DNA of 63,796 nt, filler included, from Olpidium bornovanus S191 (lineage: Eukaryota; Fungi; Olpidiomycota): assembly GCA_017911155.1 (NCBI GenBank). It is 26 parts of 26 records of this genome, joined end to end, with 100 filler letters (N's around TTAATTAATTAA, not from the genome) between each part and the next. Parts side by side here need not be neighbours in the genome. Positions count along the whole stretch, not along the records: positions 14,631 to 20,963 come from JAEFCI010000078.1; 25 more parts are not named here. The stretch is one strand, 5' to 3'. Each line of letters opens with the position of its first letter. The stretch's first letter is position 1. The position numbers were made by a program, and so were the translations under genes. A model generated the notes under the pieces. It did no database searches. It was not told where the DNA came from and saw only the letters and a program-made list of their open reading frames with translations. Shown here piece after piece: positions 14,631 to 21,077 of this stretch.

Positions 14631-15093
14631 ACATGATTCGAAATTGCTCTCGGCATTGCCAGATCAAGATAGGAGTTGCGGATGAGCAGCCAATCGCTGC
14701 GGAGACAATCAGGTCGTGGCCAAACGTGAGTCTCAGATCACCAAGTTTTACCGCTGAAATTCTACCGACATCCACAAACTACAAGACTATCCTGATAAAG
14801 GCATCGATTCGTACACTCGAACATTGGACAAGATTATTCAGGAGCGCCTGCGCGTTGCGGCGGGCAAGGCGTTTGCCATTATAGATGTTGAAGAGGAGGA
14901 TGTCAGCCAGGAAGCGACTCCTCTCCCGGGTACAGAAGCCGGCAAAATGATTGAGTCGCTTGAGACTTTTCTGGCTTCAACAGGACTAAGGAACTTTAAA
15001 AGTTTTATTGGTTTACGTATTGGTCCGGAGGCAAAACCAGCAAAAAAAAATAACTGAATTTTGAGGTTATTGTTTTAGGCAGGTGTTACTGTA
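14631..15093 (+). mobile_element. Probable 3' end of a degenerate pogo/Tigger (Tc1-mariner superfamily) transposon
   Basis: MIRNCSRHCQI resembles the pogo TIxNCFxH motif. An acidic EEEDV...EAGKMIESLETFL tail resembles the pogo/CENP-B C-terminus. The segment ends ...GTGTTACTG followed by TA (15092-93), i.e. a CAGTA-type TIR with TA target site. Confidence 0.5.
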
Positions 15094-15931
15094 GTAGCGC
15101 CCCTTTCGCCTCGTCAGATGTGGCGTGTTAGAAGGAGGCTGGCACGCCACGGCGCCAAGCGGGCTTTCCGCTTCTGCCGGTTTGGTGAATCTGGGAACTG
15201 GAAATGCCGACGAGGCTCGATGGAGGGGAGGAGGAACGGAGCCTTGTGTTGAATTGCAGAAGGCCTGCCGGAAATTCCGCGCCTTGTCTCAGCGATCGCC
15301 TTGCCGTTGGTCCACAGGGATGAAGCACGCGCCAAACACGGGGACTGCCTTGAGGAGAAGAAGAGATTGACGGTTTCACAATTCAAGTCGCGGCAAAGCC
15401 GAAAGCCGGTTTTTTTTTTTTCTTTTGCAAAATCGCTTTCGGAGCTTAGTCTAAGTCAAACGGCGGTTGCCTTTTTTTAACCACGGCGCCGGCTTGACCT
15501 TATGCTTGCGACTTTCCGTCTGCGACGCCCCGGAGAGGGAGGAAGGAAGCGCTCCGAAGCCAAGGTTATTTGCTCGCAGGCGCATCTTCGTCAAGGCTCC
15601 GCTAGCCGCAACGAAAAGAGGAAGACCCAACAGCCGGATCCGCCCTGCTGCGCTAGCCGGCGCGCTTAACGTAGTCTTCCGCGAGCAGGCAGCCGCCCCG
15701 ACGAACGCTTCCGCCGTTTATGCCTCCGAAGGGCAAGGACCCCCGGGCTTCCCGTGGTTTAAAACCCCCGCTCCCTCCCACCCCACCCACCTCCCACCCC
15801 ACCCACCTCCCACCCCGTCCGCCCCGCTCCGCCGTTTAGTCGGCGCCGCAATCAGCAGGTTTCACCCGTCGACGGGGCGTTTACTTCCCGCAACCCAGCG
15901 TTTTTTCGCGCGCTCGACAAAGGCCAAAAGA

Positions 15932-18277
15932 ATGCAGAAAATTGTGTGTGCCGCGGCCATCCTGGCTGCATTTTCATCCGGGACTACCGCATTTGGCAAG
16001 TTGGGAGAGCTCTTCGGCGCTCCAATGGCCGTCAGCACGGCGCAGTATCCGGCGATCGGCAAATCGCGATTGTACCACGTTCCGGCCCCCGTCGTTGCGG
16101 TAAAAAACGTCAAAAAGGTATGGCTAGGTACCTGGCCTCGGGAACAATAACGACGACCAAAACCAAGAAGCGGGGCGCCATCGATTCTAAACCCTTGGCG
16201 TGCTCTAGGTGGTTACTCTTCCCCCAGAAACCGTCAAGGTTTATCAGACGTTTGTCAAGACAGCAACGCCTGCTCCGCACACTTCTGTGGTTAACGTCAA
16301 ACAGGTGATTTTGTGGACCGGATGCTCCCTCCGTCGCCCATTTACCCCAACCCCCTACCAACCCCCCATTCCCCCCCCCCCCACCACCCAAAAGAAAACA
16401 GTCGACGCTAATTTCCTTAAAAGAAAACAGTCGACGCTAATTTCCTTCTTATTTGCGCAGGTCGTATCTCTGCCCGCCGAAACGGTGAAAATATACGAAA
16501 CGGTCCACTTGACAGAAACGCCGCCTCCGGTTGCGCAAACGATTCAGGTCACAAAGGTACGCTGGCGATATCCTTCTCAGAGGCGGACGCCGCACAGAGC
16601 GATGATTACCAGAAGCCAACATCAACGCCACCCCGCTTCTTGCAGATCGATCGTCTTGCCCCGCAAACCATTAAAATGGAGGAGACAGTGATGGTTACGG
16701 AGACGCCCGAACCTGTTATCGAGAAGGTTCCTGTCACCCAGGTATTTTTTTTGTTGTGCGGCGTGGTTGGGGGGAAAGGGGGGGGGGGGGTCTTTTGTCT
16801 GTTATTCCCCAGCTTCGAGGGTATGATTATCTAGCCCAAAGGTGTTGGTGATACTGAACGCACCCCGCGCAGACCAAGCATTTGCCCGCCGGAAAAAAGC
16901 AGGTGTACGAGACGGTCGTCGTCACGGAGACGCCGCCGCCTAATGTGGAGACTCTGGCCGTCACTCAGGTGCCATCGCGCCCGGGACTTGCGCTTTTTCC
17001 TATGTCGCAAAAATTGGCAGCGCACGCTGACTCGAGCTTGGGTGGCCCGACAGACCGCAGTTCTGCCGCCCGCGACGGAGACCGCTTATCAGACCGTGTT
17101 TGTGACGGAGACGCCTCAGCCTGCGGTTCACACCGTCGCGGTCACATCGGTGGGATAAAACGCAGGCGTTCTGTTTATGCTCCCCGCCGGCCCCAGCGTC
17201 GCCAAAACTTTTCGACGTCACGTTCTAGGTGGTTAAACTTCCAGCCAAGACGCAAGAGGTCACCGAAACGGCGATCGAGACGATCACCCCTCAACCGCAG
17301 GTCAGCGTTTTCACCCTCACTGAGGTAAACTGAGAGCTGTTGTCGATTTCTTTTTCTTATTTGGAAATTTACTTCCCGCGACGCCGCCCGAAAACGCTAA
17401 TTTCGTGACGACGAGCGACGGTGGAACCCGGTAGACCGTGAAACTGCCCGCTGCAACTCAGAACATCGAGTGCGTGTTGTACGTGACTCGCTCAGCGGAG
17501 CTGGTCTACGAGACCAAGATACGTACCGTCGAGTTACCGGCCGCGACAGGAGTCGCCGCGCCGCAAAAAAGCGCGCTTGTCGCCGGCAGTAAGTTTTACG
17601 CGGGTTTCCGGTCGTGTTGAATCGTCAGTTCGGCGGGACGCGCCAGCGGTCCCCCGTCGCGCCACCGCCGCACCCCGCACACCCAACCCGGCATTTGCGA
17701 CGAAATCGCAAACACAGGGAGGGAGGCGTGGTGGCGACGGGAGCAAGTCGCGAGGTATTCCTTTGCTGACGCTCCCGTGTTTTTGCGACCTCGCGGGTGC
17801 AAAGCGGCCGTCGGCGTGACTGCGGCGGCTGCCGAACAAGCGCCACCACCCGTCGGCGCGATGGGGACTTCGGCGGTCGCTGGCGTTGGAAAAGGCGAGG
17901 CGGTCGCCGGAACCGCGGCTCCCGAACAGCCGCCGTCTGCCGGCCCAGCGTTCGCGGTCGCAGGCGGCGGACGCGCCCAGGCGGACGTTGGACCCGCGGA
18001 TCCGGAGCTGGCCCCGGCTGCTGGTACCACGGGAGGAACGACCGCGGTTCTGGCTGGCGGAGAAGGCCAAGCCCAGGTGAGCGTCGGACCCGCCGTTCCC
18101 GAACTGGCGCCGGGTGCTGGTTTGGCGGGAGGAACAACCGCGGTCCCGAGCAGCGGAAAAGGCCAAGCCCAGGCAAGCGGCGGCGGCGACGGCGGCGGAC
18201 AAGCCCAAGCTACCGCCCCACATTTGTCTGTTTTGGCAGGCACTGGCAATCTGCCAGTGGCCCCCAACCGCCAGTAA
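15932..18277 (+). CDS. Secreted Thr/Val/Pro-rich repeat protein; exons 15932-16117, 16209-16304, 16461-16556, 16646-16741, 16873-16968, 17054-17149, 17229-17324, 17435-17588, then ~17810-18277 (last joins uncertain)
   Basis: Signal-peptide-like MQKIVCAAAILAAFSSGTTAFG. Six 96-nt GT-AG-bounded exons each encode a homologous 32-aa unit. Confidence 0.8.
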
Positions 18278-19154
18278 TTTTCAGTCAGACGTTCCACACC
18301 GCCCCGTTACGGCGTTCGTGACGCCCCGTCTTTTCCGGCAAAAGCCGAGCAATTTTGTTTCTTTTTTGCCCTTTTGGTCGGAATACGAAACGACGCGAAA
18401 ACGACGCGACCAGCCGAAGGGTGAAATTCTCATTTTTGACCCGTCCCCGGCGTCACGACGCCGGCATGACAAATCTCCTCGTCCTCATCACCGCAGCACT
18501 TTTCTCCCCACTAAGTGACGTGAACAGGAGATTAATCGGACTGAGAAAACTCACGTTCCGCGTATAACAGTACATGCGGGCTTCGCAAACAGCAGGAAAT
18601 TTTCGGGTTTCTTGCAGTAAGAATCAGAACCCGGGGGAGGAAGGGGCGTTTGCGGCAAGAAAATGACCTCAGAACTTGTTATGGAAACGCGAGGACACGG
18701 AGTATAATCCCCTAAACCCGGTACTCGTAAGGATAAAGTGCTTTCCCTCCCGTCCGCCTCTTCGCCGCTGAAATCGCCGGCGACAGTTGTGTACACAGGG
18801 CAGACAAAACGGGCTGCCGAAAACGACGCGGGACCTTGCGGGTACCGCGGGAAAAGATAACACCTCGCATAAAAAAAAAAAACAGGAAAAATTTCCGAAA
18901 ACGACAAACAATGTCCATTGTCCTGACGTTTGCCGATCGCCGGTTGCCGCATCCCGCCGGCGACCGGCCGTTCCGTCGGTCGCCTCCGGCGGCGGCAAAA
19001 GCAGTATTCCCTGTCGCCTACTGCTGCACGCCCGTCCAAGGTGGCGACGTCCGCAGGCGGCCGCGCGCGCGGAGGATCCGGGAAAGGGCGCGAACGCCGG
19101 CGCTCGGAGATGCGCGATCCTGGCGCACGCTCCGGCCCGACTCCGGCGCCTCAC

Positions 19155-19562
19155 CTCCTCGACGGTGCGGTACTGCTGCTCGTGGCGGATCTGTAAGGCT
19201 GCGAAACGAAGCCGCGCCTGAAGCTTTTCGGTCTCCAGAGGCGGGGTGAAGGGTGACAAGGGGGTTTCAGTTCGAGGCGGGCGTTTTCGGGCCGCGGCCG
19301 TCGGAGACGTGGTACTCCCGCAGATACCGGGCGCGCCAGGGGTCAGAGGGGAGAGGAGACTATAGACCCCTCGTCGCGCGCGCTCGCCCCGTGGTCCGTC
19401 GGGGCCAGGGCGGCCGAAGCCGCGTCTAGGGCGCCGCGGGCGGGAAAAAAGAAGAAACGGCGGCGGCGAATAACGGCGGCTGTGGCGGCGGCGACCTGGG
19501 CACGACGGCGCGGGCTGCTGCTGCTGCCGCTGCGGCGCCAGGCACGCGTCATGCGCCAGCAT
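19155..19562 (-). CDS. Possible Whi5/Nrm1-like G1/S repressor, first exon
   Basis: Cluster of SP/TP sites (LSPLTP, TSPT, ETPLSPFTPP) followed by KLQARLRFAALQIRHEQQYRTVEEV, resembling the Whi5/Nrm1 GTB motif. GTGAG donor at 19154. Confidence 0.4.
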
Positions 19563-19851
19563 CGGAAGGCTGGTCGGCAGTTTCCAGCAGAGAGAAAGCA
19601 GCCTAGAAAGGCGAACGTGGAGCGCGACTACGGCGAACCGCCTCCGCCCACCTCCTCACCGACACCATAACCACGTCCAAATCGCAAGCGAGACACAGCA
19701 GCGCGCCGGACAGAGAAACTCAATAAGGGTTCCCTTTCACAAACGCACTGTTGGCACAAAAAGACCGTTTGCCACCATGGCAACAACGTTCGCGAGGAGA
19801 ATAAAAACGATACTTTTCAAAAACGGACCGTTCCTTATTATTTCCCAGAAA

Positions 19852-19923
19852 CTCTCAAACCAAAAATAGAACCCGGGTCACCCGCGTGACAGGCGAGTAT
19901 AATCCCCACTATACGATCAAAGA
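19852..19923 (-). pseudogene. tRNA-Asp(GUC) pseudogene or tRNA-derived repeat
   Basis: Minus strand TCTTTGATCGTATAGTGGGGATTATACTCGCCTGTCACGCGGGTGACCCGGGTTCTATTTTTGGTTTGAGAG. The GTC anticodon arm is intact; the T-loop is TTCTA, the T-stem has three G-U pairs and the acceptor stem is weakened. Confidence 0.8.
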
Positions 19924-21077
19924 TTTTTGCGTGTGCCTTAACGCCGGCACTTACGAAAAAAATGCTGGTCAAGGGCTGTAGCCGTCGTTGCCTACGGGGG
20001 TGATTCCTCGATAATCTTGTCAAATTCAAAGCGCTGTGCATGCTGCAGGCTGTGACTCTGCCGACTCAAGTTAAAATGTTGTATGGCGTGCTCGAGCGGT
20101 CTTAGTATTTTTAAAACGGCCGGCCCCGTCGCCCGCCGGCGGGGGCGGGAGGAGGAAGGAGAGGAGGGAGGAAAGGTCCTTTGCCGGCGCTGGTCACGCG
20201 CTGCGGTAACGGGCTTTTCCGGCGACCAAAGAATTTCGAAGCAAGATCGCAGGCCGCGCGGAGCGGCGTCCTGCGCGGCGCGCTTCGCAGTTCGTTTCAA
20301 TGCGGCGCGTCGTTCGCCCCTGGCGGAATTCGGGCCGCGTGACCTCACATGCTTCCCCAAGTTCCCCGTCCGCACTTTTGGCGGACCGCAGCGGGAGCCG
20401 TCAAATAGATGCCTCCCGCGTGTGACACCACGACGGTATGGGGACCCGACAAAAGTCTCAGGACCATCGCCGAGAAAGTGTCCGCGCGCGGACGTCCGCG
20501 GTTCCGGGGGCTTGTGGTGGTATGCGTGTGTGTGTGTGGGTGTTAGGGAGGGGGAAGAGAGGGGCGGAAGCCTGACGCACGCGTTTGACAAACACGATGA
20601 GCACGTGAGGTGCAGAGCAAACACCTTGGCAGCTTTGCGGCACGTCTACCTCGAGGCTCTTGTTTGCGAAAGTAAGAAATGAGATCACAAGAGGAAGAGC
20701 GAGACGCGCATATCATACGAAGACCGTTCGTTCCGACTGAGAAACAGATTGTTCGCGGCGTTTTTGAACGGTTCTCGCCCCTTTGGCTCCCATAGTTTTT
20801 TGCAAAAAAAAAAAATTAAATACAAGAAAGAGACCAAAAAAAAGACAAAAAAGGAATTTGCCTGTGAACGCAGACGTTTGCTCTCGCTGTTGCCTCGCTG
20901 CTGCGTCCCGAATCCCTTGGTCAAGTCTTACAAAAAAGGGGTTCGGGGACACGAAAACATGGCNNNNNNNNNNNNNNNNNNNNNNNNNNNNNNNNNNNNN
21001 NNNNNNNTTAATTAATTAANNNNNNNNNNNNNNNNNNNNNNNNNNNNNNNNNNNNNNNNNNNNCCCGCCGGGTTGTT

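What the first reader, a model, noticed from the sequence alone, without database searches (positions are those of the whole stretch)
16209..17324. One repeat per exon: six consecutive exactly 96-nt, phase-0 exons build a secreted Thr/Val-rich array
Seen: exons 16209-16304, 16461-16556, 16646-16741, 16873-16968, 17054-17149 and 17229-17324 are each 96 nt and GT-AG bounded. They encode VVTLPPETVKVYQTFVKTATPAPHTSVVNVKQ, VVSLPAETVKIYETVHLTETPPPVAQTIQVTK, IDRLAPQTIKMEETVMVTETPEPVIEKVPVTQ, TKHLPAGKKQVYETVVVTETPPPNVETLAVTQ, TAVLPPATETAYQTVFVTETPQPAVHTVAVTS and VVKLPAKTQEVTETAIETITPQPQVSVFTLTE (consensus LPxxTxxVYETVxVTETPxP). A seventh partial unit opens the next exon. The introns are unrelated in sequence, so the array is old. 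The six-frame ORF track misses it. Inference: a beta-strand-rich stalk like fungal adhesin T-rich repeats. Symmetric exons allow any subset to be skipped in frame, giving a splice-tunable surface protein, possibly a zoospore or cyst coat adhesin.
Basis: partly seen in the sequence, partly recalled or inferred. Interest (0 to 1): 0.8.

Follow-up and report, generated by a model that had tools for sequence, protein, structure and literature searches.

The report
Secreted repeat protein, one repeat per exon
This is a real, transcribed nine-exon gene for a probably secreted 462-residue protein in which six exons of exactly 96 bases each encode one Thr/Val/Pro-rich repeat; it is a clean case of tandem exon duplication with no detectable relatives, and nothing yet shows that splicing varies the repeat number or that it is an adhesin.

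Summary
Exons 16209-16304, 16461-16556, 16646-16741, 16873-16968, 17054-17149 and 17229-17324 are each 96 nt, phase 0 and GT-AG bounded. All eight splice junctions of the gene appear in assembled transcripts from two studies.

The full model is ATG 15932 to stop 18277, nine exons, 462 aa. It has an N-terminal signal-peptide-like segment and no other hydrophobic stretch.

The units recognise each other in leave-one-out profiles at 18-38 bits. Second codon positions are conserved and third positions are near saturation. Introns are unalignable. The array is therefore old, made by duplication of an exon-plus-intron unit, and kept under purifying selection without a single indel.

No relative was found. 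Searches covered 1.84 billion representative proteins, Pfam, PDB sequences, JGI metagenome contigs and the ESM Atlas.

Secretion is plausible. Only the all-exon form was seen. AlphaFold2 gave no strands. No membrane or GPI-type anchor segment is present. The source organism was not identified.

Verdict: an orphan member of a well-known gene architecture, of modest interest.

The parts
15827..15931 (+). 5' UTR (minimum extent)
   Evidence: Transcript contigs start at 15827 (X1) and 15849 (X5); there is no depth upstream of about 15784.
15932..16117 (+). Exon 1 coding part, 186 nt, 62 aa. Residues 1-22 (15932-15997) look like a signal peptide. The last 12 residues (16082-16117) resemble the C-terminal half of a unit.
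   Evidence: ATG and phase 0. Junction 16117/16209 in X1. Only hydrophobic window of the protein. The end of exon 1 is 93% identical over 14 nt to the end of unit 1 (D4); the profile match is weak at -0.6 bits.
16209..16304 (+). Repeat exon 1 of 6 (96 nt, phase 0-0)
16305..16460 (+). Intron 2 (156 nt, in frame, no stop). It contains a perfect 29-nt tandem duplication at 16390-16447 that includes a branch-site-like GACGCTAAT.
16461..16556 (+). Repeat exon 2 of 6
16646..16741 (+). Repeat exon 3 of 6
16873..16968 (+). Repeat exon 4 of 6 (closest to the consensus)
17054..17149 (+). Repeat exon 5 of 6
17229..17324 (+). Repeat exon 6 of 6 (most diverged)
17435..17588 (+). Exon 8 (154 nt, ends in phase 1). 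It holds a degenerate seventh unit and the start of an eighth: a TV(K/E)LPAAT motif occurs twice, 30 residues apart.
   Evidence: Junctions 17324/17435 and 17588/17805. Profile matches to positions 1-12 and 1-8.
17805..18277 (+). Exon 9 coding part with stop at 18275-18277. It encodes an Ala/Gly/Pro/Gln-rich acidic tail of 157 aa. It contains its own intron-less tandem repeat of 96-nt period (17975-18174, 2.1 copies, 79%).
   Evidence: No relation to the Thr/Val units.
18278..18525 (+). 3' UTR (minimum extent)
   Evidence: An X5 contig reaches 18525; there is no depth beyond 18567.

Best explanation
The region is the core of a real nine-exon protein-coding gene on the + strand (ATG 15932, stop 18277, 462 aa).

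Origin (inferred from the anatomy). An ancestral segment of one 96-nt exon plus its intron was duplicated in tandem at least six or seven times, long ago. As a result, every 32-residue unit sits in its own phase-0 exon with the intron at the same place in each unit. Since then the introns have diverged beyond recognition. The exons have been held by purifying selection on the peptide (consensus about xVxLPAxTxKVYETVxVTETPxPxVxTVxVTQ) and have not changed length.

Expression (shown). The transcripts seen include all six exons.

Function (inferred, moderate to low certainty). The signal peptide sends the product into the secretory pathway. With no transmembrane or GPI-type hydrophobic segment, it is released or laid into an extracellular layer rather than anchored in the membrane. 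The Thr/Val/Pro-rich array acts as an extended, semi-rigid spacer or matrix element. Its short beta-branched stretches are broken at fixed points by LP(P/A) and TPxP, and it is probably O-glycosylated on the invariant Thr residues next to Pro. An acidic Ala/Gly-rich flexible tail follows. Expression looks condition-specific: the transcript was assembled in two studies and gave no reads in two other RNA runs with the same species label, which is not a controlled test.
For: - Gene model and splicing. All eight junctions are GT..AG on the + strand, and the spliced frame is open for 462 codons.
- Repeat reality: leave-one-out profile scores of 18-38 bits. Six columns are invariant: L4, T14, T18, T20, P21, P23.
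- Age and selection: between units, identity is 0.47-0.78 at second codon positions but only 0.25-0.53 at third positions. Of 28 intron pairs, 26 lie within the shuffle range.
- Same intron position and phase in every unit. The intron-exon boundary sequence is shared between units 1 and 6, and exon ends are shared between exon 1 and units 1-2 (D8 and D4).
- Secretion: the only 19-residue hydropathy window above 1.6 is at the N-terminus. There is no C-terminal hydrophobic tail and no NxS/T sequon.
- Composition of the array: T 19.8%, V 18.8%, P 12.0%, G 0.5%.
- AlphaFold2 gives an extended chain without secondary structure, which is compatible with an extended spacer.
- Expression: transcript contigs at word depth about 6-11 in X1 and X5. 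Four runs of study P1 hold 79-91% of the last-exon words. X19 and X13 gave 0 reads.
Against: - No experimental or homology-based evidence for any function. Every search for relatives was empty.
- The signal peptide is judged by rules of thumb, not by a trained predictor.
- O-glycosylation is assumed from composition only.
- The strict retention of 32 residues in all six old copies fits a regularly folded repeat better than a loose spacer. AlphaFold2's failure may simply reflect the lack of an alignment and the fact that the natural multi-unit array could not be submitted.
- The zero reads in X19 and X13 are not a valid negative: only about 6% of each run was read, and the organism's presence in those runs was not shown.
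Confidence: 0.6

Rival explanations
1. This is the reader's model: a splice-tunable surface adhesin. Different subsets of the six symmetric exons would be skipped to vary the length of a beta-rich stalk that presents an adhesive surface on a zoospore or cyst.
For: All six exons are 96 nt and phase 0-0, and the flanking exons also meet them in phase 0, so every skipped form stays in frame. The product looks secreted. The composition is rich in beta-branched residues. Known precedents for one-repeat-per-exon arrays that are varied by splicing are tau exon 10 (cited in PMC6404306) and titin PEVK (from my own knowledge).
Against: Only the full-inclusion form was assembled in two studies, and no alternative junction was reported. 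There is no anchor (no transmembrane segment, no GPI-like tail) and no recognisable binding domain. There is no match to adhesin repeat families. AlphaFold2 gives no strands. The organism and life stage are unknown.
Confidence: 0.1
2. The protein is a self-associating, functional-amyloid-like matrix or wall protein. Each unit carries one aggregation-prone stretch of beta-branched residues (TV[VMF]VT) flanked by Glu and Pro gatekeeper residues. The fixed 32-residue spacing would put these stretches in register, so that molecules stack into a cross-beta or single-layer beta-sheet assembly outside the cell.
For: There is an invariant T-x-x-x-T-x-T-P-x-P frame around a hydrophobic core at unit positions 15-17, with Glu at positions 13 and 19 in four of the six units (Gln at 13 in the other two). 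No indel has occurred in six old copies, which argues for a register-dependent structure. The only library hit aligns this stretch to the last strand plus Pro linker of a bacterial Ig-like repeat. That hit shows the sequence looks like a beta-strand followed by a linker; it does not show homology.
Against: No aggregation predictor or experiment was available. AlphaFold2 shows no strand pairing between two units, though on an artificial intron-retaining construct with a shallow alignment. Dense O-glycosylation, if present, would oppose stacking.
Confidence: 0.15
3. The protein is a secreted, lineage-specific repeat effector or host- and environment-facing decoy whose repeats bind an external partner, rather than a structural element.
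For: It is an orphan with a signal peptide, tandem repeats and apparently condition-specific expression. These are features common to repeat-containing secreted effectors of eukaryotic microbes (from my own knowledge).
Against: The repeats are old and conserved in length rather than rapidly varying. No host-targeting motif or partner is known. It is not known whether the organism is a pathogen.
Confidence: 0.1
4. There is no functional protein: the locus is transcribed and spliced, but its coding appearance comes from repetitive sequence.
For: No homologue anywhere. The tail is of low complexity.
Against: The spliced frame is open for 462 codons across nine exons. The conservation pattern by codon position is that of selection on the peptide: second positions far more conserved than third. 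Splice sites are precise in two studies.
Confidence: 0.03

Closest known systems
Tau (MAPT) microtubule-binding repeats
   Same: Repeats of 31-32 residues, each in its own exon. Skipping one of them (exon 10) gives 3- or 4-repeat isoforms. This is the textbook case of one repeat per exon with repeat number set by splicing (31-to-32-residue repeats and 3R/4R isoforms: PMC6404306, found; exon layout from my own knowledge).
   Different: Tau is cytosolic, basic and Gly/Lys-rich, and binds microtubules. There is no sequence similarity. Here the product looks secreted, and no skipping has been seen.
Titin PEVK exons
   Same: Many short symmetric exons, each encoding one repeat of about 28 residues rich in Pro/Glu/Val/Lys. 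Together they form an extended unfolded spring whose length is set by exon skipping (my own knowledge). In the array here, P+E+V+K make up 46%.
   Different: Titin PEVK is intracellular and lies within a giant muscle protein. Here Thr is the commonest residue, the protein has a signal peptide, and there are only six to eight units. No homology was found.
Candida Als adhesin tandem repeats (36-residue Thr/Val-rich units)
   Same: Thr/Val/Pro-rich units of similar length in a secreted protein. In Als these units are O-glycosylated, beta-rich and hydrophobic, and they serve as a stalk and in aggregation (my own knowledge).
   Different: No Pfam match to the Als repeat or N-terminal domain. No GPI-type C-terminus. 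Als repeats lie in one exon and vary in number between alleles. Here each unit is a separate exon and the copies are old.
Mucin-type PTS domains and the PMEL repeat domain
   Same: A Pro/Thr-rich extracellular repeat region with Thr next to Pro, likely to carry O-glycans (PMEL repeat domain: PMC8273697, found).
   Different: S+T+P is only 34% and Val 19%, so the array is far more hydrophobic than a mucin. Mucin repeats are usually in one large exon and vary in length. Here length is strictly fixed.
Tandem exon duplication arrays in general (collagen 54-bp exons, leucine-rich-repeat exons)
   Same: Identical exon length, identical phase and one structural unit per exon, all arising from duplication of an exon-intron unit (my own knowledge).
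   Different: A different peptide family: no Gly-X-Y triplets and no LRR consensus.

Membership tests
Als-type fungal adhesins | Match to the Als tandem-repeat and N-terminal Ig-like domain models in Pfam | tested here: not met
   hmmscan of exon 1, three repeat exons, exon 8 and exon 9 against Pfam-A at E<=1 gave 0 families.
Als-type fungal adhesins | C-terminal GPI-anchor signal (hydrophobic tail) | tested here: not met
   The only hydropathy window above 1.6 is N-terminal, and the C-terminus ends in a polar ...LPVAPNRQ. This is a heuristic, not a GPI predictor.
Mucin-type PTS repeat proteins | Ser+Thr+Pro dominate the repeat (typically well above 40%), and the repeats are length-variable and disordered | tested here: not met
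   S+T+P is 33.9% and Val 18.8%. All six units are exactly 32 aa.
Mucin-type PTS repeat proteins | Dense O-glycosylation | not testable with these tools
   No glycosylation predictor or data. Three invariant Thr residues sit next to the invariant P-x-P.
Exon-duplication repeat arrays (one unit per symmetric exon) | Consecutive exons of equal length and equal phase, each encoding one homologous unit, with the junctions used in mRNA | tested here: met
   Six exons of 96 nt, phase 0-0. Junctions seen in transcripts. Units recognise each other in leave-one-out profiles.
Splice-tuned repeat arrays (tau, titin PEVK type) | Isoforms that differ by inclusion of repeat exons | tested here: inconclusive
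   Only the full-inclusion form appears in contigs of X1 and X5. Contigs drop rare variants. The raw runs X19 and X13 gave no reads.
Secreted proteins (classical pathway) | N-terminal signal peptide with a charged n-region, a hydrophobic core and small residues at -3/-1 | tested here: met
   MQK, then an 11-residue hydrophobic core, then ...TAFG before K23. Hydropathy maximum of 1.69 at residue 4. This is rule-based only; no SignalP was available.
Bacterial Ig-like (Big) tandem domains (the only library hit, P0001) | Full-length match to a domain of about 80-100 residues | tested here: not met
   The match covers profile positions 10-31 only, at E 3.4e-5 across five stretches. It falls on the last strand plus Pro linker of each bacterial repeat. 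Judged compositional.

The most novel reading that the evidence does not exclude
The 32-residue unit may be a new, length-locked beta-structural repeat, forming a single-layer sheet or solenoid built from two long strands per unit broken at LP(P/A) and TPxP. On this reading it lies in a stage-specific secreted coat or matrix protein, and the number of units is varied by in-frame skipping of the symmetric exons. That would make it a microbial, extracellular counterpart of the tau or titin-PEVK principle.
Probability: 0.08. Interest if true: 0.55.

Novelty: new member of a known kind. Interest (0 to 1): 0.3.

Why it matters
The gene is a very clean record of how a repeat protein grows by tandem duplication of an exon-intron unit. 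It has six old copies with the same length and phase, unrecognisable introns and a peptide still under selection.

It also appears to be missing from the large protein collections searched, so it may be unannotated in its genome. Ordinary ORF-based calling cannot find it.

If the array proves to be a folded periodic structure, or if its exons are skipped in some life stage, it would be a compact model for extracellular length tuning by splicing in a microbe. As it stands, it is an orphan secreted repeat protein of unknown role.

Tried and rejected
**Searches for relatives (all empty)**
- A profile of the six units against 1.84 billion representative proteins gave one compositional hit to a bacterial Ig-like repeat protein. 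The gene's own product would have scored 264 bits, so it and any close relative are absent.
- Pfam on every exon product gave nothing.
- The last exon against 5.8 billion proteins gave nothing.
- A PDB profile search gave only a chance 11-residue match at E 0.9.
- ESM Atlas best score was 0.55, which is meaningless.
- JGI metagenome contigs gave nothing by the exon 1 protein or by a 40-bit degenerate DNA motif.

**Attempts to identify the organism**
- The upstream gene's last 89 aa gave no Pfam, Atlas or homologue hit.
- Exact look-up of three long ORFs of the piece found nothing on record.

**Idea tested and rejected**
- I tested whether the Ala/Gly-rich 96-nt-period repeats of the last exon are degenerate copies of the Thr/Val unit. 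hhalign gave probability 0.09, and a circular-shift profile test gave p = 0.79.

**Structure**
- One unit with its six paralogues as alignment gave an extended chain with no secondary structure (pLDDT 75, pTM 0.15).
- Unit 1, the in-frame intron 2 and unit 2 as one chain gave pLDDT 47.6 and no strands.

**Other**
- Rfam found only the tRNA.
- Literature searches found analogies but no description of this gene.

Full report
**1. Observation**

The six exons are 16209-16304, 16461-16556, 16646-16741, 16873-16968, 17054-17149 and 17229-17324.
- Each is exactly 96 nt, preceded by AG and followed by GT.
- Each translates in phase 0 to the 32-residue peptides quoted.
- The intervening introns are 156, 89, 131, 85 and 79 nt.
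- They are flanked by a 91-nt intron upstream and a 110-nt intron downstream.

**2. Gene model and transcription**

An ATG at 15932 opens a 186-nt first exon that also ends in phase 0. After the sixth repeat exon come exon 8 (17435-17588, 154 nt) and exon 9 (17805 to the stop at 18275-18277). Joined, the nine exons give an open frame of 1389 nt, or 462 aa.

Public runs that hold this DNA were found, and two contig runs and two raw runs were laid on 15300-18900.
- Contigs of X1 carry all eight junctions at exactly the predicted places. All are GT..AG on the + strand.
- Contigs of X5, from a different study, carry seven of them.
- Both runs cover only about 15827-18525 and leave the introns nearly empty. 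X5 is therefore cDNA in practice, despite being guessed as 'DNA?'.
- The only departure is a 135-nt X1 contig that retains intron 6, which would stop translation after two codons. It looks like unspliced precursor.
- No exon-skipping junction was reported. However, assembled contigs drop minor isoforms.
- The raw RNA runs X19 and X13 yielded no reads from the roughly 6% of each run that was read, and the organism's presence in them was not shown. They are not a test.
- A second index search with the last exon found the transcript only in the four runs of study P1 among indexed RNA runs.

**3. The repeat is real, old and constrained**

- Six columns are invariant: L4, T14, T18, T20, P21 and P23.
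- A profile built from any five units detects the sixth at 18.4-38.0 bits.
- A six-frame scan of the whole piece finds no further hidden units. It finds only a 12-residue start of a seventh unit at 17435-17470 and very weak echoes at 16082-16117 and 17525-17548.
- Between units, identity at second codon positions is 0.47-0.78. At third positions it is 0.25-0.53. Silent sites are close to saturation while the peptide is held.
- Intron pairs score within the range of shuffled controls, with two exceptions. One is a short match between introns 2 and 7 that covers a branch-site-like GACGCTAAT. The other is a marginal value for introns 3 and 4.
- A few boundary strings are still shared. TCTAG|GTGGTTA occurs at units 1 and 6. 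AACGTCAAA(A/C)AG|GT occurs at the ends of exon 1 and unit 1.

Together with the identical position and phase of every intron, this is the signature of tandem duplication of an exon-plus-intron segment, followed by long divergence. It is notable that no insertion or deletion has been fixed in six copies that are only 28-53% identical as peptides.

**4. The protein**

- Residues 1-22 have the form of a signal peptide: MQK, an 11-residue hydrophobic core, then small residues at -3 and -1. They hold the only 19-residue hydropathy window above 1.6.
- There is no second hydrophobic segment, no hydrophobic C-terminus and no NxS/T sequon.
- The array (residues 63-254) is 19.8% Thr, 18.8% Val, 12.0% Pro, 9.4% Glu and 0.5% Gly. 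Its pI is 5.3.
- Each unit has two proline breaks, LP(P/A) at positions 4-6 and TPxP at positions 20-23. Between them lie stretches rich in beta-branched residues. The longer stretch has a hydrophobic core at positions 15-17. Glu or Gln occupies position 13 in every unit, and Glu occupies position 19 in four of the six.
- The last exon encodes a 157-residue acidic Ala/Gly/Pro/Gln-rich tail.

**5. Search for relatives**

Nothing was found.
- Pfam gave no family for any exon product at E<=1.
- The unit profile against 1.84 billion representative proteins gave one hit at E 3.4e-5. It is a bacterial protein of tandem Ig-like repeats. Only the last strand and Pro-rich linker of each of its repeats aligns to unit positions 10-31. 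I read this as compositional resemblance (a beta-strand followed by a proline linker), not homology.
- The gene's own product would score 264 bits in that search. So neither it nor anything like it is in the library.
- The last exon, the PDB, the ESM Atlas and JGI metagenome contigs were also empty.
- Exact look-ups of long ORFs from the piece, and a search with the neighbouring gene's C-terminus, found nothing. This suggests that the genome is simply not represented in those collections. The lack of relatives therefore shows an orphan with respect to what is indexed, not necessarily with respect to sister species.

**6. Structure**

The natural spliced array could not be handed to the predictor, because it has no reference.
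- One unit, with its paralogues as alignment, came back as an extended chain without secondary structure (pLDDT 75, pTM 0.15).
- An artificial chain was also tried: unit 1, the in-frame stop-free intron 2, and unit 2. It gave pLDDT 47.6 and no strands.

This neither supports nor excludes the beta-rich reading.

**7. What it most likely is**

Shown:
- It is an expressed, precisely spliced gene.
- Its core is six one-repeat exons under purifying selection.

Inferred with fair confidence:
- It arose by tandem exon-intron duplication.
- Its product enters the secretory pathway and is not membrane-anchored.

Inferred with low confidence:
- The array serves as an extended, probably O-glycosylated spacer or matrix element in an extracellular layer.
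- Expression is limited to some conditions.

The strict length conservation keeps the self-stacking beta-structure rival alive. The adhesin, zoospore and cyst labels have none: there is no anchor, no binding domain, no family match and no identified organism.

The piece has 58% G+C, CpG observed/expected of 1.23, 79-216-nt GT-AG introns and CTRAY-like branch sites. That fits many fungi and protists and does not name one.

**8. Comparison with known systems and novelty**

The architecture is well known from collagen, leucine-rich-repeat genes, titin PEVK and tau. Tau even has repeats of 31-32 residues, each in its own exon (PMC6404306, found; the exon layout is from my own knowledge). The composition recalls fungal Als repeats and mucin or PMEL repeat domains. 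The tested membership criteria for Als adhesins and for mucin-type repeats fail; PMEL was not tested.

I therefore class it as a new, orphan member of a known kind of gene architecture. It is a tidy example worth annotating, but not surprising to a specialist unless exon skipping or a new fold is later shown.

Noticed in passing
window 17975-18174: The last exon has its own intron-less tandem repeat with the same 96-nt / 32-aa period (2.1 copies, 79% identical, Ala/Gly/Pro-rich), plus two more degenerate copies upstream. No relation to the Thr/Val units could be shown (hhalign probability 0.09; circular-shift test p = 0.79), so the equal period is unexplained.
   Followed up: yes
window 16390-16447 (inside intron 2): A perfect 29-nt tandem duplication doubles a branch-site-like GACGCTAAT. 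Intron 2 is also the only intron that is a multiple of three (156 nt) and free of in-frame stops, so retaining it would add 52 residues in frame.
   Followed up: partly
window 19852-19923, minus strand: A tRNA-Asp (GTC) gene about 1.6 kb downstream of the stop codon. ARAGORN calls it; Rfam scores it 28.7 bits, just under the gathering score of 29. A short stretch at about 18696-18715 shares GAGTATAATCCCC with it but is not called as a tRNA.
   Followed up: partly
window 14631-15057, plus strand: The 3' end of an upstream gene on the same strand, with its stop at 15055-15057. Its last 89 residues have no Pfam, Atlas or homologue match. Its exon structure near 14720-14787 could not be resolved.
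   Followed up: partly
window 15771-15830: A C-rich tract with a roughly 20-nt direct repeat (CCCACCCCACCCACCTCCCA-like), 100-160 nt upstream of the ATG and just upstream of the first transcript contig base (15827). It may be a promoter element or just low complexity.
   Followed up: no
window 17124-17257: One X1 contig retains intron 6. It differs from the window by one substitution (17176 T>A) and one inserted A after 17203. The spliced contigs carry A>G at 17494 and 18343. The sequenced samples are therefore a slightly different strain or allele from the window.
   Followed up: no
window 18300-20963: Apart from the tRNA, 2.7 kb downstream shows no convincing coding frame on either strand, despite long GC-driven ORFs of up to 297 aa on the minus strand. 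It contains purine-rich and (GT)n low-complexity tracts.
   Followed up: partly
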